From positions 124,001-188,000 of IMG/VR virus record IMGVR_UViG_3300042907_001080: a stretch of 64,000 nucleotides of DNA, one strand, 5' to 3'. The notes under the pieces were generated by a model. It was not told the DNA's origin and did not search any database. It worked only from the letters and a program-made list of their open reading frames with translations. Both the position numbers and the translations under genes were made by a program. Within the stretch, counting starts at the first letter, position 1; each line of letters starts with the position of its first letter. Positions 47,705-56,472 of this stretch are shown one piece after another.

Positions 47705-47733
47705 ATTATATAGTCATAAAAAAAGCCAGTCAA
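47705..47733 (-). promoter_or_regulatory. Sigma70-type promoter
   Basis: TTGACT-17 nt-TATAAT upstream of the dsbA-like/polymerase genes. Confidence 0.8.
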
Positions 47734-47750
47734 TGATAGACTGGCTTTTT
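47718..47750. terminator. Intrinsic terminator (bidirectional-type)
   Basis: aaaaagccagtc-aatgata-gactggcttttt, with A/T tracts on both sides. Confidence 0.85.
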
Positions 47751-47767: not shown

Positions 47768-48625
47768 TTACTTTTGTGCTTCGCTTAGTACATCATACAT
47801 TTCAAATACGCCACCGTTGCGTTCATAGACCAACCCTGCGTATAAGTCTGCTTTCATGCCTTCGCCTAGTTTGTTACGAGCTACACGCTCTGCCCATGTA
47901 AACAGAGCTTTGTCTACAGGATCAATTTGTTGCTGGCCGCCACTTTCTTGAACCAGTTGAACCATTTGTTTGAAAGATAATTTTGTTTCTACTGATTCAG
48001 CAACTACTTTCTTAGAAGTTGTTACTGATTCATTTTTCTTACCAAAGTATTTGGCCTGCTTGTCGCTCATACCTTTCTTGCTAGCTGGCTTGTCGCCGCC
48101 CTTTTCACCGGCAGCTTTCTTCATTGGCTCTTTCTTGTCGCCGTCTTTGTCGAGGTCTAGGAAATCTGGCTTAGATCCTTCTGCCATTTTTTCTTTCTTG
48201 GCCATTTTCTTTTTCTTATCAGCAGCTTCATCTTTCTTGGCTTCTACCATTTTCATGAATTTGCTTTTAAATTCTGGTTCTACACTTTCTTTTTTGGCTT
48301 TTTTCTTTGGCTTGTCTTCGTCATCAGCTTCTTTTTCTTCACTGCCACCATAGGCCTTGCTGCTCTTGTGAACAATGCCTGTTTTTGTTTTTTCAACAGT
48401 GCCAGTAGCAATGTTTTTCTTATCGCCTACTTTCATGTCGTCCGCTTCTTTAACGTCTTCTTCAGCTTTTTTCTTAGCTTCAGCAACGTAGGTAGTGCGG
48501 CCACTTAGAACACGCAGTTGTGCGTCTTCATTTAATTGCACAGATTTTGGCAGCTCTGGTGCTTTTGGAGTATCGATTTTGCCGTCGATACTTTCTATTT
48601 TGCTGATTAACGATTTGAAGTCCAT
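47768..48625 (-). CDS. Lys/Glu-rich putative internal head/scaffold-associated protein
   Basis: Low-complexity K/E segments, many [ILV]xE sites, 'KPDFLDLDKDGDKKEPMKKA' module; late promoter upstream. Confidence 0.55.
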   Translation of the reverse strand: MDFKSLISKIESIDGKIDTPKAPELPKSVQLNEDAQLRVLSGRTTYVAEAKKKAEEDVKEADDMKVGDKKNIATGTVEKTKTGIVHKSSKAYGGSEEKEADDEDKPKKKAKKESVEPEFKSKFMKMVEAKKDEAADKKKKMAKKEKMAEGSKPDFLDLDKDGDKKEPMKKAAGEKGGDKPASKKGMSDKQAKYFGKKNESVTTSKKVVAESVETKLSFKQMVQLVQESGGQQQIDPVDKALFTWAERVARNKLGEGMKADLYAGLVYERNGGVFEMYDVLSEAQK

Positions 48626-48651
48626 GTTCACATTCCTAAAAGTGTATTATG

Positions 48652-48659
48652 TATTTATC
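48652..48659 (-). promoter_or_regulatory. Late promoter-like GATAAATA
   Basis: Overlaps the upstream stop codon and precedes 47768-48625. Confidence 0.55.
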
Positions 48660-48840
48660 TTTTTACCAAAGACCCACCAGTTAACAGATTAGTTCCCTTG
48701 AGATCTAATGCGTTTTTTGCGGTTCCGTCTTTGTTTTTTGCCGTTTTTCCGGGTTTATTTTTGTATACCGCACCTATAGCTACGTTACCAGCACTGGTAG
48801 CGCCTGCTGTTGCTGATTCTACAATTTCACGTATTTTCAT
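48655..48840 (-). CDS. Small putative internal head protein
   Basis: Starts MKIREIVE, then 'SATAGATSAGNVA'. Confidence 0.55.
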   Translation of the reverse strand: MKIREIVESATAGATSAGNVAIGAVYKNKPGKTAKNKDGTAKNALDLKGTNLLTGGSLVKR

Positions 48841-48844
48841 ACTA

Positions 48845-49165
48845 TTATTTATTCTTCTTAGCACGACCTGCTTTCATGTTAGCTAGCCAGTGCGCTAGTT
48901 GTCCTTTGCGCCCGCCTTGTTTCGCAGTTTTACGTAGACTACTTACTGATGCTTTGGTATTAATGCCGTGTCGTTTGCTGTCGCCTTTGTCCTGAGGATT
49001 CTTGCCATCCGCAAAGTTTTCTCCTACACCTCCACCATCTCCTCCACCATCTCCACTATAACCTACAGCATAGCCATAACCGCCGTAAGGACCCGGACCG
49101 TAAGCAGCCCAACGTGGCTTTTTACGTTTCTTTTTTCTTTCAACTATAAATTCACTTGCTCTCAT
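48845..49165 (-). CDS. Putative internal head protein, Gly/Tyr-rich and basic
   Basis: Starts MRASEFIVE; 'ENFADGK.P..KG.S.R' and 'AHW.ANMK.GR' modules. Confidence 0.6.
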   Translation of the reverse strand: MRASEFIVERKKKRKKPRWAAYGPGPYGGYGYAVGYSGDGGGDGGGVGENFADGKNPQDKGDSKRHGINTKASVSSLRKTAKQGGRKGQLAHWLANMKAGRAKKNK

Positions 49166-49239
49166 ACTGGGCTATAAGGATTCTTTGGAGTGTCGTATCC
49201 GTCATCATCTGGATACACTGGATAATTGTTTGGGTTCAT
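49162..49239 (-). CDS. 25-aa micropeptide, absent from the ORF track
   Basis: [25 protein letters not shown]; exactly fills the gap, with ATGA overlaps at both ends. Confidence 0.6.
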
Positions 49240-49562
49240 ACTGAAAAACTTGATCCACACCCGCAGGTAGATTGTGCATTGGGATTACTAATAACAAACT
49301 GACTGCCCATGGCTTCTTCTTTGTAATCAATAACAGCACCTTGTAGATATTGCATACTCATTGCATCAACAAACACGTTGTATTGTTCGTTGATAGGAAA
49401 TTCAAAGTCGTCTTCGTTCTTTGTTTCGTCAAAGGTAAAGCCATAACTGAAGCCACTGCAACCGCCACCTTGCACAAAGGTGCGCAATGCCAGCTTGGGA
49501 TTATTTTCTTCTAGCAGCAAATCCATAATCTTTGATTTCGCTGATTGTGTTATTTCAACCAT
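49236..49562 (-). CDS. A-type Fe-S carrier (ErpA/IscA/HesB family)
   Basis: '[17 protein letters not shown]', 'VDAMS..YL.GA.IDY', '[13 protein letters not shown]'. Confidence 0.93.
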
Positions 49563-49770
49563 TTTGTTTTCCAATAGGCTTTTCGCCTGTTAAGTAAGGC
49601 AAACTAAACCATAGCTTAAACCATTCTTCGGTGCCTGGTCTTATATCATGTTTTTTCATAAGTTCACCTTTTTCATTACCAGTTATACTTATGTTACTGC
49701 CAGCATATGGTTGATATCCTTGATATTCTGTGATACCAGCTAATTTTTTCAGTTCATCTAGTTCTGACAT
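49555..49770 (-). CDS. Hypothetical protein
   Basis: '[13 protein letters not shown]...[13 protein letters not shown]'; SD AAGGAG. Confidence 0.6.
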
Positions 49771-50122
49771 TTTTAGCTGCTCCTTTGCGATTGGCATTGG
49801 GGTCTTCACGACGTTTGCGAGCAGCAGCAGTGGCACGACCTTTCTTGCCTAGTGCGTGAGCCTTGCTCTGTGGTAGACACTTAGGCTTGCCTTCTTTCTC
49901 ACTGTCTCTAGCACAGTCGCCACGTATCTTGCCATCTGGTCCAAAGCGGACCCATTTGTCTTTGAACCACTGACGCAGATTTTCATCTATGGGTGCTATG
50001 TCTTCTGATTTTTTACGACCTTGGCAGTGAGCTCGTTGACTAAACCCTTTGGGGTTAGAACAGTTTATGGACTTTTTATATTTTTTAGTCCACTTCTCAG
50101 TGACAAACTCATATGCTCTCAC
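49754..50122 (-). CDS. Putative internal head protein, basic and Cys-containing
   Basis: Starts MRAYEFVTE; modules 'KW.KKYKKSINCSNPKGFSQRAHC' and 'LRQWFKDKWV...KPKCLP'. Confidence 0.6.
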   Translation of the reverse strand: MRAYEFVTEKWTKKYKKSINCSNPKGFSQRAHCQGRKKSEDIAPIDENLRQWFKDKWVRFGPDGKIRGDCARDSEKEGKPKCLPQSKAHALGKKGRATAAARKRREDPNANRKGAAKNVRTR

Positions 50123-50499
50123 TTCTTCTTGCCCTTGCCATAATTAGCAGCACCTGCTTTGCGACACTGTACCAATCGTCCTGACGCATAGGCACTGGGC
50201 CAAACCTTGGACGAAGCTTTGATCTTGTGATAGCAGGCATCTTTCTTGCCTTCTTCAAGTTGGTCTTCTGAGACCATGTCTCCGTGACATATAGGGCATA
50301 CACCTGCTTCTATGTAGTCTTGAAGACTTTTACCTTCCGCTACATCTTGCTCCATAGGAATCAAATCTTTCTTATGTTTAGTGTCGCCCTGTTTCTCTGC
50401 CCGCTTTTTATCTTTGTGAGCGCCAGCACCTGCGCTTTTAGAATTTTTAGCAACAAAGTTTCTAGGCCGGCTGGCTGGTATAATGTCTTTGGCTCTCAT
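50119..50499 (-). CDS. Putative internal head protein
   Basis: Modules 'RNFVAK...AGAHKDKK', 'CPIC' and 'DACYHKIK..KVWPSAYASGRLVQCRK', separated by VAE/LEE. Confidence 0.6.
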   Translation of the reverse strand: MRAKDIIPASRPRNFVAKNSKSAGAGAHKDKKRAEKQGDTKHKKDLIPMEQDVAEGKSLQDYIEAGVCPICHGDMVSEDQLEEGKKDACYHKIKASSKVWPSAYASGRLVQCRKAGAANYGKGKKK

Positions 50500-51641
50500 A
50501 CTGTAATACCTCTTGATCGTATTCCGCCCTTGCTTTTGATTTTACCTAGCTCTTCGAGCGCATGACGAATTTGTTCCATGTTCATTTTCAGTTCTTCAAA
50601 CTGACGAGCCATGATTTGCCATTCACCCGGACTGGCGTTTTCTGCCCGAGCTGCAAGATCTTTTAATTGACCAGCAGCACGTAGCATACGATATTTTAAT
50701 TTAGCAGGATTGCTGCCAGTACCATATATCATTGGATCCATGGGATCGCTGGGATCCATTTCAATTGGAGCTTCTTTGACTTCTTCTTTCTTTTTAGGAT
50801 ATCCGTGTTTGATATTTAACGTATATCCCTGCAGTCCTTGTTTATCTAAAACTCCGCTGATAAATTTTTCTGCTTCTCTAGCATTATCGAATTTATCACC
50901 TAAATTATATTTTCTAACCTCGCCGTCAATCATTACATAGGCAATGGTGATAGGCTTAACAGGTTCTTCTGCTGCCTGAGCAGGACTTCCTAAAAGATTG
51001 GCGGCGGCCAATGCTGCACCAGCAGCTTTGCTTTTCCAGCCTTCTTCTACTTCGCCCTTGATTCCCATGCCTTTTCTCACAGCAGCGAACAACGGTTTGG
51101 ACAACTCGCCTGCGCCAGTGGATTCTTGGAATGCTTCGAAATCATTATTAGCTGCTGCTGCTCTTGCACCGCTGGCGCTGACTCCTGCTACACCTTCGGC
51201 ACCGTCTTCACGGTCTCCGCTGCTGGCAAAATCAATTACGTCAAACTTATAAAAACCATGTGCTTTGCCTTCGACACCGTTGTATTGTGTGAGAAGGCTT
51301 TTCATGTCTTCTAGGCGATCTGAGCCTGCTACGAAGGTAACTGCGTTGTAACCCTGCTCATGTAGGTAGCTGGCCACCTTGCCGATGGTGTTTAATGCTG
51401 CATTCTCTACAACATCCTTGGCATACTGGGGGAACATTTCCTTAATGAATTTGATCTTGGTAGCATAGTCCAATGGGTTTTTCTTTTTGTCTTGACTTTG
51501 GCTGACAAAAATTTTCATTTCTCCGCCTTGGCTTTTCATGGTATCTAATACCTGTTTGTGACCAATGGTAGGTGGATTCATTCTGCCAAAGCAGAATGTC
51601 ACATGTTTGGTTCCGGCTTCGAACAATTCATTTAACAGCAT
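50496..51641 (-). CDS. Cytidylyltransferase-like (HIGH) nucleotidyltransferase with modular C-terminal extension
   Basis: 'FGRMNPPTIGH', 'KNPL', 'VAGSDR', 'VSAS.AR'; N-terminus MLLNELFE. Confidence 0.8.
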   Translation of the reverse strand: MLLNELFEAGTKHVTFCFGRMNPPTIGHKQVLDTMKSQGGEMKIFVSQSQDKKKNPLDYATKIKFIKEMFPQYAKDVVENAALNTIGKVASYLHEQGYNAVTFVAGSDRLEDMKSLLTQYNGVEGKAHGFYKFDVIDFASSGDREDGAEGVAGVSASGARAAAANNDFEAFQESTGAGELSKPLFAAVRKGMGIKGEVEEGWKSKAAGAALAAANLLGSPAQAAEEPVKPITIAYVMIDGEVRKYNLGDKFDNAREAEKFISGVLDKQGLQGYTLNIKHGYPKKKEEVKEAPIEMDPSDPMDPMIYGTGSNPAKLKYRMLRAAGQLKDLAARAENASPGEWQIMARQFEELKMNMEQIRHALEELGKIKSKGGIRSRGITV

Positions 51642-51976
51642 TAATCGTAGTCGCCTTTTTCTATGTGTTTTTCTTGCTCACCGGCAATACGTTTGGCCAA
51701 GTCTATGAGCTTGTCTTTGGGAAACTTTTGTTCCGCATCGTCGATATCGTATTTGTCGCAATAATGACCCATGCACTTTTCTAATGGTCGGATGTAGACC
51801 TTGAATACATTGGGATTGCCTCTGTGCTCGCGATGACGTTTCACCGCAGGGAAAAAATACTGGTCCAGCATTTTTGAATCGTTGTCGATGAAAAATTTTA
51901 AATCATCCAACCAATCGATTTCTTGTTGTTCGTCTTTGGGTGCGCCAATGGCACTGAACATTTCTTTTAATAACAT
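51641..51976 (-). CDS. Hypothetical protein
   Basis: 111 aa starting MLLKEMF; TAATG overlaps. Confidence 0.6.
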   Translation of the reverse strand: MLLKEMFSAIGAPKDEQQEIDWLDDLKFFIDNDSKMLDQYFFPAVKRHREHRGNPNVFKVYIRPLEKCMGHYCDKYDIDDAEQKFPKDKLIDLAKRIAGEQEKHIEKGDYD

Positions 51977-53052
51977 TACCAGCTCCGGCAAGACCAGTAT
52001 CTGGCTTTATGACGAGGTCCTGGATTAGCACAATTATGACGAGCACGGAATGATTTTCTACGTGCAGGATTGGATTTTTTGATACGCATTTTCTTGTCAC
52101 CGAAGTTTACTTTGACAATGTTACCATTAGGCTTGCGAACATATACTTTGGATTTCTTGACATCACCAGCCATCTTTTTACCTAATGGAACTTCGCGGCC
52201 TTGATACTTTGCTTCGTCAACATCTCCTTCTGCTACACCTTCTTCGTATTTCTGTGCTTTCATATAATCACGAGCTGTGTCAATATAGTCCACAGCTTTG
52301 GTGATCTTACTCTGCACCCATTCTGGAAGATTGTCGTCCGCTTGTAGAATACTGTATAGTTCTTCGGCAGCACTGTCTATGGTGCGTAGATCATCCTTGG
52401 CCATGTCGCCTTCGCGATCATATTCGCCGTAGTTCACAGGTGCATCTGGATTCTCGGGACCGTGATCTTCTTTTTTTAGATACTTGTCCTTGATACGACC
52501 TTTTTCTTCTTCGTCAGCACCCTCACGCCCTGCTTTCTGTAGTGCTTCAAATCCATCTTTGCCGTATTTTTTAATACCTGTATATCTTTGTAATCCGCTT
52601 TCACCTATCTTTGTGCAGTCGTTCTTGCCGACTCTGCGATAGCCTTTCCAACAGGCCTTGCCGTGTGTGCCTTTGACTTTGTCTTCTACTAGTTCACCTT
52701 CTAAGAATTGTAAGCCTTCATTAGTCAGCATCTCTAGTGCGGTGTCATCTAATTCGATTACAATGCCATCTTCTAGAATATCTACAATAGTAGTGGCAAT
52801 CTCGTGATCTTCTGAAAAGCTGATACCAAACTCGTCACCTACTTCAAATGATTCTGCAAATCCTTTAGATTTGGCCTCTTTTTCGAGATCTGTTTTTCTT
52901 TGTGTAATTGCACTGCTGATTTCTGGATCGGTGCTAGCCACAGGATCTTTTTCAAGATCTGCCAGGGCTTTGCGTTTGGCCTGAAGATCTTCAGGATTTT
53001 TTAATGCTGTTTCGCTTACTATAGCGTCTAATTTAGATAACAGGTCTCTCAT
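51976..53052 (-). CDS. Modular putative internal head protein
   Basis: Modules separated by xxE sites; C-terminal 'KVNFGD..M.IK...P.RRKSFRARHNC...KARYWSC'; late promoter and SD. Confidence 0.6.
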   Translation of the reverse strand: MRDLLSKLDAIVSETALKNPEDLQAKRKALADLEKDPVASTDPEISSAITQRKTDLEKEAKSKGFAESFEVGDEFGISFSEDHEIATTIVDILEDGIVIELDDTALEMLTNEGLQFLEGELVEDKVKGTHGKACWKGYRRVGKNDCTKIGESGLQRYTGIKKYGKDGFEALQKAGREGADEEEKGRIKDKYLKKEDHGPENPDAPVNYGEYDREGDMAKDDLRTIDSAAEELYSILQADDNLPEWVQSKITKAVDYIDTARDYMKAQKYEEGVAEGDVDEAKYQGREVPLGKKMAGDVKKSKVYVRKPNGNIVKVNFGDKKMRIKKSNPARRKSFRARHNCANPGPRHKARYWSCRSW

Positions 53053-53076: not shown

Positions 53077-53084
53077 TATTTATC
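53077..53084 (-). promoter_or_regulatory. Late promoter-like GATAAATA heading the internal-protein cluster
   Basis: Intergenic; context GACGATAAATA also occurs at 61427-61437. Confidence 0.65.
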
Positions 53085-53096
53085 GTCTCAAACAGT

Positions 53097-53462
53097 TTAG
53101 TGATTATACCGAACTTCGGTGATTATGCCCTGTTCCAGCTGATACGCCACACGTATGAACACAAATTTACCAGTGAATGTGCAGGCAGCGTTAGTAGTAA
53201 CAGGTGTGCTATCTATAGCAGTTAACACAGTGTCTGAACTATCGAGAACTACATCAACCCAGTCGTTGACACCGGGATTTAGGTCTAGAGTGGCCTGTAT
53301 TTTAATGCTGCCCTTGAAATTATTCAGCTCAAAAGTCATAGTATGCACACCGTTACCGTTTTTGTAATAGCCTGCACCTATGTGTTTTTCGCCGTATTGC
53401 CACGTAGAGGGCTGACTATCGTCAGTGATATTTGATAATAATACTATGGTTTCTCTGCTCAT
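53097..53462 (-). CDS. Hypothetical beta-rich late protein
   Basis: About 121 aa, 4 nt after GATAAATA. Confidence 0.6.
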   Translation of the reverse strand: MSRETIVLLSNITDDSQPSTWQYGEKHIGAGYYKNGNGVHTMTFELNNFKGSIKIQATLDLNPGVNDWVDVVLDSSDTVLTAIDSTPVTTNAACTFTGKFVFIRVAYQLEQGIITEVRYNH

Positions 53463-53465
53463 CAA

Positions 53466-54149
53466 CTATTTATCGCATACTATAAAGTTATATACTCTGC
53501 CCACAACGTCAGCACCACGCAGTTTCATCATTAGCAGTGTGGATTCATCTTCAACTAATACATATCTACGGTCCCAATTCCAATCTGTGGTCAAGAACCA
53601 ACGTTCGATCGCAGGAGTGCAGGTTATTCTAGGGGCTTGTGATTTCAGCCAGGCTAGATATTTCTGTTTGCCTTCACGATCTTTGGCCATTTTATGCGGC
53701 ATGAGATACACGCGATAGCGATATCTGTCCTTGGGCAGTTTACTCACTGTGATACAGTTCTGTGAATTATTCAACACATCGAGATTGTTGATGTTGGGTT
53801 CAAATCTATGCACCAAGTAATCTTGGCTAGCTAGGCTGAGTTTTTCGTAGAACTCAGGATCGTTGGTATAAACATCTAGTCTATTCCTTTCAACCCTTGT
53901 TGCGTATGCATCTTCGTCGTAGGAACTAAAAAAGTCACAAACGCTGCTTATTATTTCTTTATTAGCTGTGGCCCTACGCCAATTATCATAATGATATCCG
54001 CTGTCACTGTTAGAATTTTCTAACCAGTCCTTGATATTTGAAATAGGCTGTGTGCGAAATATCACACAGCCGTCTATTTGCAGGCTGATTTTATATAACC
54101 ATTTGTTGTAGAACTTACGACTGGTCGATTTGGTTTTCAGTTGTAGCAT
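53466..54149 (-). CDS. Hypothetical protein
   Basis: About 227 aa overlapping the clpA 3' end. Confidence 0.6.
   Translation of the reverse strand: MLQLKTKSTSRKFYNKWLYKISLQIDGCVIFRTQPISNIKDWLENSNSDSGYHYDNWRRATANKEIISSVCDFFSSYDEDAYATRVERNRLDVYTNDPEFYEKLSLASQDYLVHRFEPNINNLDVLNNSQNCITVSKLPKDRYRYRVYLMPHKMAKDREGKQKYLAWLKSQAPRITCTPAIERWFLTTDWNWDRRYVLVEDESTLLMMKLRGADVVGRVYNFIVCDK
53467..53474 (-). promoter_or_regulatory. Late promoter-like GATAAATA
   Basis: 4 nt before the ATG at 53462. Confidence 0.55.
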
Positions 54150-56472
54150 CTTGTTCTTGTGTATTTGCTGCTTCAGCAATTCGTTGCGCCCTAAGAGCTT
54201 TTCTTTCTTCCTTGGTCAACGGTTTTGGTATCTCAACCACTGTGAAATCCAATTTGTCATCGATGATATCCACGGTAACTCTTCCACCATTTACTAGATC
54301 ACCGAACAGCACTCTGCGACTTAGTGGGCTCTTGATTTCATTGTCGATGATTCGTGCCAATGGTCTAGCACCCATCTTCTTGTCGTAGCCTCGATCTGCT
54401 AGCCAACGTGTGGCCTTGGCGTTAACCACGATCTCAATGCCTTTGTCTTTTAATTGACTGTTGAGATCAGCCACAAACTTCTTGACGATCTGGATCACAG
54501 TATCGCCACTGAGTTTAGAGAACTTGATTACAGCATCTAGTCTATTGCGGAATTCTGGGCTGAAATGTTTCTTAATGGCTCTGTCATCTTCGCCATCACG
54601 TTCTAGTTCGCCAAATCCGATGGTGTTGAGTTCGTTGTCAGCGGCTCCGAGATTTGACGTCATAATCAAAATAGTATTACGACCGTCTGCTACTTTGCCA
54701 TTGGATCCGGTGATAAAACCATTGTCCATGAACGCTAGAAGAATATTCATAACATCCGGATGAGCTTTTTCAACTTCGTCTAATAGTAAGATAGCGTTGG
54801 GTGTTTCTTGTAGTTTGGTGATCAACATACCAGCATTATCTTCGTAACCAACATAACCCGGAGGAGCACCAATTAATCTTGCTACTGAATGCTTTTCCTG
54901 ATACTCACCCATGTCAAATCGGATTAACTGCATACCCATTTTATCTGATAATTGTTTAGCAGTTTCGGTTTTGCCACAGCCTGTGGGTCCCAAGAATAGG
55001 AATGACCCAATAGGCTTGTTAGGTGCCTTCATGCCAGCCTGACTCACAAAGATTTTATCTAACAATGTATCTACAGCATTATCTTGTCCGTAGACCACAC
55101 CCTTCATCTGAGTGTCTAACTCTGAAAGATTTTTGCTTTCTTTTTGCGCCACGGTTTCTAATGGCATGTTAATCATCTTACTGAGTTCGTAGGTGACCTG
55201 TTCGATGTCTACAATCTGTGTAACACCTTCCATGCCCTCATCATCTTTGAGCTTATATCTAGCACAGGCACAGTCAATAATATCAATAGCCTTGTCAGGC
55301 AGTTTTTTATCACTCATATATTTGACACTGAGCTTAACTGCTTGTTCGATGGCTGCATCGGATATTTTTACATTGTGATGTTGCTCGTAGTATTTCTTTA
55401 GACCTTTAAGGATCTTCACAGCCATTTCTGGTGTAGGCTCTTCAACGGTCACACGTTGGAATCGACGCATCAGCGCACGATCGCCTTCGAAGTGCTTGCG
55501 ATATTCTTCCCATGTGGTAGATGCTATCAGCTTGAGAACACCTTTGGTAAGTATGGGTTTCAACATATTGGCCATGTCGTTTGAACTGCCATTTGCAGCA
55601 CCCGCACCGTTCATCATGTGTGCTTCGTCGATGAACAAGATGATCTTGCCTTTTTTCTCTAGTGCAGCCAACACCGCTTTAACTCGTTCTTCGAAATCAC
55701 CACGATACTTTGATCCTGCTAGGAGAGCACTGATGTCCAAAGTATAGACTTGATGGTCCTTGATAAATTTAGGAACCTTGCCTTCGTGAATCTTACGAGC
55801 AATGCCCTCAGCAATAGCAGTTTTACCCACTCCGGGATCACCTACCATTAACACGTTGGCCTTGTTTCGACGTGCCAATACCAATTGTATTTTTTCTATT
55901 TCGTCATCACGGCCTATTACAGGATCAAGTTTTCGCTGTTTGGCCTTGAGACTGAGATTGGTACAAAACTGATTCAATATTCGATCTATTTGATTTGAGT
56001 TCACTATTCTTGTTTCAACTTCGGCGTCTTCGGTAACCTGCACATTTTCTTGGAAATACTTTACAAACTTTTCTTTAGTCACCCCGGCCTTGGTAAGAAA
56101 GTAGTAACCGAAACTGTTTTTCTCTGACAGCACACTGATAATGATATCTGCTATCTCCATGCGCTGTCTACCGCTAAACAACACCTGTGTAAAGCAACGA
56201 TTCAACACACGTTCTACGCTGTTGGTCTTTTTAGGTTTTGCGTTGGCATTGGTAGTTTTAATATCATTGAGATTGTTTTTTAAGTAGTGTTCTATATTTG
56301 TTTTAACAAATTTAGCATCAGCACCAAAACTTTCTAATAGTTTATAAGAATCCTCATCATCCATAATGCCATAGATAATATGTTCAATGGTTATGTACTC
56401 GTGACTCAAAGTCTTGGCCATCTCTATAGATTTTTCAAAAATTTCTTGTAGGCTCTTACTGGGTTCAATCAT
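54115..56472 (-). CDS. clpA: ATP-dependent Clp protease ATPase subunit ClpA
   Basis: N-domain 'HEYITIEH'; Walker A 'GDPGVGKT' and 'GPTGCGKT'; Walker B 'LFIDEAH' and 'LLDEVEKAH'; pore loops 'KYRG' and 'GYVG'; IGF loop 'TIGFG'; no ClpB middle domain. Confidence 0.92.
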   Translation of the reverse strand: MIEPSKSLQEIFEKSIEMAKTLSHEYITIEHIIYGIMDDEDSYKLLESFGADAKFVKTNIEHYLKNNLNDIKTTNANAKPKKTNSVERVLNRCFTQVLFSGRQRMEIADIIISVLSEKNSFGYYFLTKAGVTKEKFVKYFQENVQVTEDAEVETRIVNSNQIDRILNQFCTNLSLKAKQRKLDPVIGRDDEIEKIQLVLARRNKANVLMVGDPGVGKTAIAEGIARKIHEGKVPKFIKDHQVYTLDISALLAGSKYRGDFEERVKAVLAALEKKGKIILFIDEAHMMNGAGAANGSSNDMANMLKPILTKGVLKLIASTTWEEYRKHFEGDRALMRRFQRVTVEEPTPEMAVKILKGLKKYYEQHHNVKISDAAIEQAVKLSVKYMSDKKLPDKAIDIIDCACARYKLKDDEGMEGVTQIVDIEQVTYELSKMINMPLETVAQKESKNLSELDTQMKGVVYGQDNAVDTLLDKIFVSQAGMKAPNKPIGSFLFLGPTGCGKTETAKQLSDKMGMQLIRFDMGEYQEKHSVARLIGAPPGYVGYEDNAGMLITKLQETPNAILLLDEVEKAHPDVMNILLAFMDNGFITGSNGKVADGRNTILIMTSNLGAADNELNTIGFGELERDGEDDRAIKKHFSPEFRNRLDAVIKFSKLSGDTVIQIVKKFVADLNSQLKDKGIEIVVNAKATRWLADRGYDKKMGARPLARIIDNEIKSPLSRRVLFGDLVNGGRVTVDIIDDKLDFTVVEIPKPLTKEERKALRAQRIAEAANTQEQDATTENQIDQS

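What the first reader, a model, noticed from the sequence alone, without database searches (positions are those of the whole stretch)
47768..53052. Capsid-targeted 'polyproteins': microprotein modules separated by putative prohead-protease sites
Seen: neighbouring late genes begin [34 protein letters not shown] and MLLKEMF. Their bodies are strings of short, basic, often Cys-paired modules bounded by [ILV]xE: LVE|DKVKGTHGKACWKGY..C..IGE|SGLQRY..; VDE|AKYQGREV..YWSC; LEE|GKKDACYHK..; IDE|NLRQWFK..; VGE|NFADGK... Established: T4 internal proteins have an N-terminal capsid-targeting sequence (MKTYQEFIAE-type), are cleaved by gp21 after (I/L)xE, and are injected with the DNA; IPI* blocks a restriction enzyme. 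Inference: this is a shuffled library of packaged peptides released at head maturation and delivered at infection, possibly anti-defence or DNA-condensing effectors.
Basis: partly seen in the sequence, partly recalled or inferred. Interest (0 to 1): 0.78.

Follow-up and report, generated by a model that had tools for sequence, protein, structure and literature searches.

The report
Capsid-targeted polyprotein locus of a jumbo phage
A late-expressed gene cluster in a 282-kb T4-related marine phage encodes small basic protein modules that carry T4-style capsid-targeting leaders and head-protease cut sites, so the phage most likely packs these mini-proteins into its head with the DNA. The same building blocks occur in thousands of marine phage proteins.

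Summary
Window 47768-53052 (minus strand) is a late transcription unit with ten tightly packed genes. A T4-type late promoter motif (53077-53083) opens it and a hairpin terminator (47720-47750) closes it.

- **Leaders:** Five genes start with 8-10 residue leaders ending in [ILV]-x-E, like the T4 capsid targeting sequence and the gp24 propeptide.
- **Protease:** The genome encodes a gp21-type (S77) prohead protease and a gp55-like late sigma factor.
- **Cut-site match:** After its leader, one 61-aa protein repeats the 13 residues that follow the predicted cleavage site of the phage's own major capsid protein. Only 24 of the 39 coding bases are identical.
- **Module boundaries:** Across 150 diverse relatives, three unrelated modules all begin right after h-x-E. 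'GVAE|G' linkers recur 72 times.
- **Architecture:** Modules are fused into proteins up to 1,243 aa in relatives. They are leaderless single genes in three phages without this protease.
- **Virion evidence:** Published virion mass spectrometry of cyanophage S-CREM2 detected homologues of two cluster proteins.

Cleavage, injection and function remain untested. This is a new variant of the T4 internal-protein system, apparently not yet described.

The parts
53077..53083 (-). T4-type late promoter motif ATAAATA, 24 nt upstream of the p1 start
   Evidence: Eight of ten other genes directly downstream of this motif in the genome are virion structural genes. The motif is under-represented genome-wide (47 found against about 120 expected). 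A gp55-like late sigma factor is encoded.
51976..53052 (-). p1, 358 aa. It has a 14-aa leader ending IVSE, acidic linkers, an ACWKGY two-Cys module (+5), a helical module, an EGVAE|G linker and a C-terminal two-Cys basic module (+21).
   Evidence: phrog_7595 on residues 281-358. In relative L003 the segment right after the leader is replaced (454 aa).
51641..51976 (-). p2, 111 aa, starts MLLKEMF. Acidic, two Cys, no family match.
   Evidence: Its start overlaps the p1 stop (TAATG).
50496..51641 (-). p3, 381 aa. MLLNELFE leader, a cytidylyltransferase-like nucleotidyltransferase, and a C-terminal extension that starts after VEE|G.
   Evidence: PF01467 at 1.5e-7; phrog_3041 and phrog_395. It is 38% identical to S-CREM2 gp154, which starts MKNFSSFLTE and was detected in virions. 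The extension is absent in relative L003.
50119..50499 (-). p4, 126 aa. Leader-like MRAKDIIP without a cleavable E, a basic N-terminal part, a DVAE|G linker, a CPIC knuckle and the DACYHK...WPSAYASG...CRK module.
   Evidence: The module is found in 3203 representative clusters. Relative L003 has a 126-aa insertion ending at GVAE|A.
49754..50122 (-). p5, 122 aa. MRAYEFVTE leader, then module C (KWTKKYKKSINC..C), IDE|, then module B (NLRQWF..C..C).
   Evidence: P0112 and P0117 carry extra modules inserted between the two linker sites.
49555..49770 (-). p6, 71 aa. [15 protein letters not shown] resembles the C-terminal end of the phage's scaffold protein (DIRRLAGLKV).
   Evidence: These are the only two hits of this motif in the genome.
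49236..49574 (-). p7, IscA/HesB-type iron-sulfur assembly protein, co-transcribed with the cluster. Probably not a packaged module.
   Evidence: PF01521 at 4.2e-18. Paralogue at genome 216642-216968. Conserved at the same place in L003.
48845..49165 (-). p8, 106 aa. MRASEFIVE leader, a basic Gly/Tyr-rich piece, VGE|, then a basic NFADGK module (+12).
   Evidence: L003 has a 77-aa insertion that ends at MDE|NFADGK.
48655..48840 (-). p9, 61 aa. MKIREIVE leader, then 13 residues identical to the major capsid protein just after its predicted cleavage site, then a basic tail.
   Evidence: Only 24 of 39 nt are identical and every difference is synonymous.
48652..48658 (-). Second late promoter motif ATAAATA, followed by TTTTAGGAAT as upstream of the head-proximal leader gene at genome 100098
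47768..48631 (-). p10, 287 aa. Lys/Glu-rich, no Cys, N-terminus MDFKSLISKIE similar to that of p1. Scaffold-like composition.
   Evidence: conserved in L003
47720..47750 (.). 12-bp palindromic hairpin flanked by A and T runs. A two-way terminator that ends the unit 18 nt after p10.

Best explanation
This is the internal-protein locus of a T4-superfamily jumbo phage.

Proposed sequence of events:
1. The genes are transcribed late from T4-type late promoters.
2. The short N-terminal leaders act like the T4 capsid targeting sequence. They are amphipathic, with an aromatic or hydrophobic residue near position 4-7, and end in [ILV]-x-E. They bring the proteins into the scaffolding core of the prohead.
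3. The gp21-type serine protease cuts after Glu. This removes the acidic leaders and linkers and, at least in part, separates the precursors into small, strongly basic modules (+5 to +21), most with one Cys pair.
4. The modules stay with the packaged DNA and leave the head with it at infection.
5. A second signal is a copy of the capsid protein's own N-arm placed right after the leader. It most likely docks the protein to whatever partner recognises the capsid protein at maturation, whether protease, core or inner shell.

Shown: gene structure, late promoter motif, the protease gene, leader and site statistics, module shuffling, and virion presence of homologues in another phage.

Inferred: targeting, cleavage, retention and ejection in this phage.

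Most likely role of the basic modules: DNA-bound internal proteins for charge neutralisation or condensation, possibly with early functions in the host. One packaged enzyme, the cytidylyltransferase-like p3, rides the same route, as Alt does in T4.
For: Leaders and protease:
- The leaders match the T4 CTS MKTYQEFIAE and the gp24 propeptide MAKINELLRE. The genome also has MKTFKEYLVE in the exact T4 register behind a late promoter.
- The gp21 rule is L/I-x-E, and Asp does not substitute for Glu.
- The S77 protease scores E 6.8e-25 and aligns with T4 gp21 through the conserved HP and GVSSRG motifs.

Capsid N-arm mimic:
- The capsid protein aligns with gp23, and LAE|S falls at the propeptide/mature junction.
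- p9 repeats the next 13 residues with 15 synonymous base differences.
- In S-CREM2, internal protein gp160 repeats that phage's own, different capsid N-arm. S-RIM2 has a third case.

Module boundaries:
- Three unrelated modules begin right after h-x-E in 32/32, 38/41 and 21/21 distinct contexts. Glu is never replaced by Asp, and there is no conservation further upstream.
- GVAEG occurs 72 times, and [ILV]xE has z of about 26.
- Indels between close relatives end at these sites.
- The predicted fragments split into acidic leaders and linkers and basic modules.

Comparative pattern:
- The modules are stand-alone, without leader or h-x-E prefix, in three phages that lack S77. They are fused with a leader in S77 phages.
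- A 172-kb relative has one 1111-aa fused protein at the syntenic place next to DNA polymerase, behind ATAAATA.

Virion evidence:
- S-CREM2 virion MS found gp154 (the p3 homologue) and gp160 (modules B, A and D) (PMC10665884).

Late expression.
Against: - There is no direct evidence of packaging or cleavage for this phage.
- The S-CREM2 data give only presence (3 and 7 peptides), not termini.
- T4 IPs are cut only once although the motif is short, so motif presence does not prove cutting.
- Two conserved sites lie between the CPxC knuckle and the DACYHK part of what looks like one four-Cys unit.
- p4 and its many MKAKEFIP relatives lack the Glu of the leader.
- S-RIM2's fused protein has no leader, and its junctions read VQxE rather than h-x-E.
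- The locus sits among replication genes, not in the head module.
- Structure models are of modest confidence, and no fold or solved relative was found. The activity of the modules is therefore unknown.
Confidence: 0.62

Rival explanations
1. The proteins are packaged and lose only the N-terminal leader, as T4 IPI-III do. The internal h-x-E sites are not cut, so multi-module proteins stay intact in the head.
For: T4 IPs are cleaved only once. Sites between CPxC and DACYHK lie inside a probable single folded unit. The S-CREM2 MS result is compatible with intact gp160.
Against: The Glu at the first residue before three unrelated modules is invariant, and the GVAE|G linkers recur. Both are hard to explain if the sites are never used. 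The same modules are free-standing genes in protease-less phages.
Confidence: 0.2
2. They are accessory core or scaffold proteins, like T4 gp22, gp67 and gp68. They are cut to pieces and mostly expelled before DNA packaging. They help head assembly or size control and are not delivered to the host.
For: The scaffold protein itself has a leader-like start. p10 and the first third of p1 are charged, helical and Cys-free. p6 copies the scaffold C-terminal motif. T4 core proteins carry many sites.
Against: The conserved modules are strongly basic and would bind DNA rather than leave. Homologues are still present in mature S-CREM2 virions. Podoviruses without protease or T4-type core keep the modules.
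Confidence: 0.1
3. They are cytoplasmic late proteins, for example metal- or DNA-binding factors helped by the co-transcribed IscA-type protein. The N-terminal motif and the h-x-E sites are coincidental helix features.
For: The locus lies among replication genes next to DNA polymerase. An Fe-S assembly gene is in the operon. Every module has paired Cys.
Against: Leader enrichment is about tenfold over shuffles. The capsid N-arm mimic is kept by selection in three phages. Homologues are detected in virions. The prefix is absent in protease-less phages.
Confidence: 0.05

Closest known systems
T4 internal proteins IPI, IPII, IPIII and Alt with the capsid targeting sequence
   Same: A leader of about 10 residues ends in L/I-x-E. 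A gp21-type protease is present. The genes are late, the mature parts are basic, and the bodies vary between relatives. One enzyme (p3, compare Alt) uses the same route.
   Different: The bodies are unrelated to the T4 IPs. Here they are strings of reusable mini-modules with internal sites and standard linkers. Some leaders are one residue shorter or of a 14-residue type. A capsid-protein N-arm mimic follows the leader. The family spans marine myoviruses and a jumbo phage rather than T-even coliphages.
T4 prohead core proteins gp22, gp67, gp68
   Same: They are cut at many L/I-x-E sites by gp21 and have leader-like starts (MLKEQLIAE, MLLIPE). gp68 has a basic tail.
   Different: Those are assembly proteins that are mostly expelled. 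The modules here are conserved, Cys-paired, basic and also exist as independent genes.
Inner-body and ejection proteins of phiKZ, 201phi2-1 and SPN3US, processed by gp175/gp245-type proteases
   Same: Many head-internal proteins are processed after Glu by a diverged gp21 homologue. Propeptides carry several sites.
   Different: The site rule differs and the proteins are large rather than shuffled mini-modules. No sequence relation was seen.
Polyvalent proteins of phages and conjugative elements (Iyer et al. 2017)
   Same: Many domains sit in one polypeptide that is thought to be delivered with the DNA and processed into units.
   Different: Those carry enzymatic anti-defence domains and their own MPTase peptidase. 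None of these domains was found here, and processing would be by the prohead protease in trans.
Pfam DUF6321, DUF3008, DUF5872, DUF7230 and PHROGs 727, 3477, 38880, 23735, 12753, 7595
   Same: These families cover individual modules. The S-RIM2 fused protein hits DUF6321 at 1.4e-22. p4 and p5 hit the PHROGs at 1e-13 to 5e-21.
   Different: All are of unknown function. The window proteins fall below the Pfam cut-offs. No paper in the held library links these families to capsid targeting.

Membership tests
T4-type CTS-bearing internal head proteins | N-terminal leader of about 10 residues with hydrophobic or aromatic residues near positions 4 and 7 and L/I-x-E at its end | tested here: met
   p5, p8, p9 and p3 in the window; MKTFKEYLVE elsewhere in the genome in the exact T4 register. 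p4 lacks the Glu.
T4-type CTS-bearing internal head proteins | The same genome encodes a gp21-type (Peptidase_S77) prohead protease with the catalytic His and Ser | tested here: met
   E 6.8e-25, above the Pfam cut-off. It aligns with T4 gp21 through the HP and GVSSRG motifs.
T4-type CTS-bearing internal head proteins | Late expression together with the head genes | tested here: met
   At motif level only. ATAAATA lies before p1 and p10. The motif precedes structural genes in 8 of 10 other cases. A gp55-like sigma factor is present. No transcript data.
T4-type CTS-bearing internal head proteins | Protein physically present in the mature head | not testable with these tools
   Indirect only: homologues gp154 and gp160 were detected in S-CREM2 virions by MS.
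T4-type CTS-bearing internal head proteins | Leader removed by cleavage after Glu | not testable with these tools
   Indirect only: p9 copies the residues after the capsid protein's predicted cut site.
T4-type CTS-bearing internal head proteins | Sequence homology of the mature part to T4 IPI, IPII or IPIII | tested here: not met
   No Pfam family matched other than PF01467 and PF01521, even at E up to 10. The kinship is functional, not by descent of the bodies.
Polyvalent proteins (Iyer et al. 2017) | Known conflict domains (MuF, ART, ParB-like and others) and an MPTase or similar own peptidase in the same polypeptide | tested here: not met
   Pfam and PHROG scans found none.
Pfam DUF5872 / DUF7230 (modules of p4) | Score above the curated cut-off | tested here: not met
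   13.6 and 14.5 bits against cut-offs of 27.5 and 27. Related at best at superfamily level.
Protease-processed viral polyprotein (functional class) | Independent functional units joined by recurrent sites for one protease; the units are separate genes in relatives | tested here: met
   h-x-E prefix on three unrelated modules and GVAE|G linkers. The modules are fused in L014 and S-RIM2, split into coupled genes here, and are single genes in podoviruses. Actual cleavage was not tested.

The most novel reading that the evidence does not exclude
Marine T4-superfamily phages run a general cargo system. Any module that carries a short leader, often followed by a copy of the phage's own capsid N-arm that co-evolves with the capsid gene, is loaded into the prohead. 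The head protease then dissects long polyproteins at standard GVAE|G-type joints into disulfide-stabilised basic microproteins of 3-9 kDa. These travel with the DNA into the host. The N-arm mimic would be a second, previously unrecognised capsid-targeting or protease-docking signal.
Probability: 0.45. Interest if true: 0.85.

Novelty: new variant of a known kind. Interest (0 to 1): 0.72.

Why it matters
- **Reach of the T4 mechanism.** It would extend the targeting and processing logic of T4 internal proteins from a few coliphages to a very large group of ocean phages. Module D alone occurs in 3203 clusters at 50% identity.
- **Function for unknown families.** It would give several domain-of-unknown-function families a concrete, testable cell-biological role.
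- **Unexplained virion proteins.** It would explain why 'non-structural' proteins such as a cytidylyltransferase turn up in cyanophage virions.
- **New docking signal.** The capsid N-arm mimic suggests a docking signal that could be tested by cryo-EM and used to load cargo into phage heads.

Tried and rejected
- **Near-identical DNA in the phage collection:** none found.
- **Structure prediction:** p5 and p4 with custom alignments gave only pLDDT 63 and 67.
- **Fold and sequence searches against solved structures:** Foldseek against PDB gave nothing below E = 1. Profile searches of PDB sequences gave only spurious hits. The ESM Atlas gave unnamed viral clusters.
- **RNA families:** Rfam found no RNA family in the region.
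- **Plus strand:** its ORFs are short and lie opposite low-complexity coding sequence, so they were not pursued.
- **Alignment error:** the first D-module alignment (A2) misplaced the N-terminal segments and was discarded for A3.
- **Local-alignment starts:** these are about twofold enriched within a few residues of h-x-E sites, but the peak is blurred. The module-specific context tables are the better test.
- **Recent duplication of the capsid gene as the source of the p9 match:** rejected, because 15 of 39 bases differ, all synonymously.
- **h-x-E prefix as part of each module's fold:** rejected as the main explanation. Three unrelated modules share it, Asp never replaces Glu, and stand-alone copies in protease-less phages lack it.
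- **Literature:** no paper in the held library links these DUFs or cyanophages to capsid targeting. That library is incomplete.


Full report
**What is there**

The window is bases 124001-188000 of a 281,658-bp viral record. Its DNA polymerase is closest to those of the jumbo phages Phosso (50%) and Atu_ph07 (47%).

The finding's span holds ten minus-strand genes.
- p1 to p5 are translationally coupled, with TAATG, ATGA and GTGA overlaps.
- An ATAAATA motif lies 24 nt before p1 (53077-53083). A second lies before p10 (48652-48658).
- A 12-bp hairpin with flanking A and T runs ends the unit 18 nt after p10 (47720-47750).

The motif is a credible T4-type late promoter.
- It is under-represented in the genome.
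- Eight of ten other genes directly behind it are baseplate, tail tube, adaptor, tail fibre or virion structural genes.
- A gp55-like late sigma factor is encoded.

So 'late genes' is supported at motif level.

**The leaders**

The quoted N-termini are real.
- A leader pattern fits 11 of 339 crude genes, against 1.1 +/- 1.0 after shuffling residues 2-13.
- Besides the four in this cluster, the hits include two genes next to the head module (MRINELLTE, MKIRDIVVE), the scaffold protein, MRAKEFINE, and MKTFKEYLVE behind its own late promoter.
- The T4 CTS is MKTYQEFIAE. The T4 gp24 propeptide reads MAKINELLRE.
- T4 gp21 cuts after L/I-x-E. In the CTS, residues 4 and 7 matter for targeting, and residues 8 and 10 for processing. 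Asp at position 10 blocks processing.
- Three leader-coding segments were also picked up as a DNA repeat family (D2).

**The protease and the capsid protein**

The genome has a Peptidase_S77 gene (E 6.8e-25). It sits in a T4-like head module of portal, acidic protein, protease, scaffold and capsid protein. It aligns with T4 gp21 through the HP and GVSSRG motifs.

The capsid protein aligns with gp23. Its LAE|S site falls at the junction between propeptide and mature protein.

p9 reads leader, Glu, then the same 13 residues that follow that site in the capsid protein. Only 24 of the 39 coding bases are identical, and all differences are synonymous. Selection on the peptide keeps the match, not a recent copy.

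Other phages show the same arrangement.
- In cyanophage S-CREM2, the internal protein gp160 carries, after an h-x-E site, a stretch of about 25 residues matching that phage's own, different capsid N-arm.
- S-RIM2 has a third such protein.
- Many metagenomic relatives start with a leader followed by a TAGATSSGSVA-like stretch.

**The modules**

- p4 and p5 hit long PHROG profiles at different internal positions.
- An exhaustive HMMER search with p4 found 3203 representative clusters. The DACYHK...WPSAYASG...CRK module sits at any position in proteins of 77-1243 aa.
- p5 has 1990 relatives in the 90% clusters.
- One S-RIM2 protein of 456 aa joins four modules that the window spreads over p1, p4 and p5.
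- Its last module is Pfam DUF6321 and another is near DUF3008. The window proteins reach only sub-threshold DUF5872 and DUF7230 scores.

**Are the boundaries protease sites?**

In 150 representatives:
- [ILV]xE occurs 1214 times against 659 +/- 21 in shuffles.
- GVAEG is the commonest pentamer outside the query module, at 72 times. Long proteins read like polyproteins with QGVAE|G joints.
- Three unrelated modules begin directly after h-x-E: ACWKGY in 32/32 distinct contexts, NLRKWF in 38/41 and KWTKKYK in 21/21.
- In these contexts P3 is hydrophobic, P2 is variable, Glu is never replaced by Asp, and there is no conservation further upstream.
- In several proteins the leader's own Glu is the residue before the module.

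Between close relatives:
- Extra modules are inserted between the two linker sites of p5.
- In syntenic contig L003, p1, p3, p4 and p8 differ by 77-184 residues. The differences end at h-x-E sites.

The predicted fragments of the window proteins split into acidic leaders and linkers and basic modules of +5 to +21.

**A natural control**

In three phages without S77, the same modules are tiny stand-alone genes. They start MAKK.. or MPAKK.., with no leader and no h-x-E prefix. These phages are the T7-like P-SCSP1g, Pra-JY27 and CRP-901. In P-SCSP1g the module genes sit right after the capsid gene.

S-CREM2, which has S77, has the fused, leader-bearing form. A 172-kb metagenomic relative has a single 1111-aa fused protein behind ATAAATA, next to its DNA polymerase. 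That is the same place as the cluster here.

**Virion evidence from the literature**

The S-CREM2 virion proteome lists two relevant proteins (PMC10665884).
- gp154 is a cytidylyltransferase (3 peptides). It is 38% identical to p3 and starts MKNFSSFLTE.
- gp160 (7 peptides) carries modules B, A and D.

The authors noted possible encapsidation. In the passages I read they did not mention a targeting leader, the modules or cleavage.

**What remains open**

- Nothing here shows cleavage, retention or ejection for this phage.
- Two conserved sites lie between a CPxC knuckle and the DACYHK part. These are nearly always adjacent, and the model packs them together at pLDDT 70-84. A cut there may not separate the pieces.
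- p4-type proteins lack the leader Glu.
- S-RIM2's fused protein has no leader, and its joints read VQxE.
- No fold or solved relative was found.
- The very high conservation of the modules (18 invariant columns in 87 copies), and their presence in podoviruses, make a DNA-associated housekeeping role more likely than an arms-race effector role. This is inference.

**Verdict**

It is best filed as a new variant of the T4 CTS/internal-protein system with three additions:
- a polyprotein architecture;
- standard linkers;
- a capsid N-arm mimic.

I found no description of this in the held literature. That library is incomplete.

Noticed in passing
window 49236-49574 (-); paralogue at genome 216642-216968: An IscA/HesB-type iron-sulfur assembly gene is co-transcribed inside the cluster of Cys-pair modules and is conserved at the same place in a relative. 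The phage has a second copy. Whether it serves the Cys-rich modules is open.
   Followed up: partly
window 54115-56472 (-), with 53466-54179 and 53097-53465: A 785-aa ClpA/ClpB-like double AAA+ chaperone lies just upstream, followed by two unknown genes. The second of these has an ATAAATA motif at its start (53467-53473). The same order is kept in contig L003.
   Followed up: no
window 49555-49770 (-) and genome 89371-90465 (-): p6 carries ELKKLAGI, close to the last residues of the scaffold protein (DIRRLAGLKV). These are the only two such motifs in the genome. One metagenomic relative has DRLKKLAGL near its end. This may be a scaffold-type shell-binding tag.
   Followed up: partly
window 50496-51641 (-), residues 201-381 of p3: The cytidylyltransferase-like protein has a 180-residue C-terminal extension that starts after VEE|G. 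It is missing in a relative of the same phage lineage (L003).
   Followed up: partly
genome 41968-42564 (-), outside the window: A 198-aa protein starts MKTFKEYLVE, the exact register of the T4 CTS, directly behind a late promoter motif. It has no PHROG match.
   Followed up: partly
genome 98705-100098 (-) and 94598-97564 (-), outside the window: Two further leader-bearing genes (MRINELLTE, Ala/Pro-rich 323 aa; MKIRDIVVE, 141 aa) sit just upstream of a 988-aa Gly-rich and coiled-coil protein and the portal gene. The first shares the promoter and TTTTAGGAAT 5' region with p10.
   Followed up: partly
L013 6561-6995 and L014 14489-14929: In two unrelated metagenomic contigs a ferritin-like gene lies close downstream of the long polyprotein gene. 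This again links the Cys-rich modules to a metal-handling gene.
   Followed up: no
window 48846-48852 (-): A third ATAAATA lies only 5 nt before the p9 start codon, inside the last codons of p8. It is too close for a normal 5' leader, so it may be chance.
   Followed up: no
L011 1552-2969 (S-CREM2): In S-CREM2 the virion-associated cytidylyltransferase gene directly follows the late sigma factor gene. Three neighbouring hypothetical proteins (gp155, gp156, gp160) are also virion-detected, which suggests a comparable internal-protein locus.
   Followed up: partly
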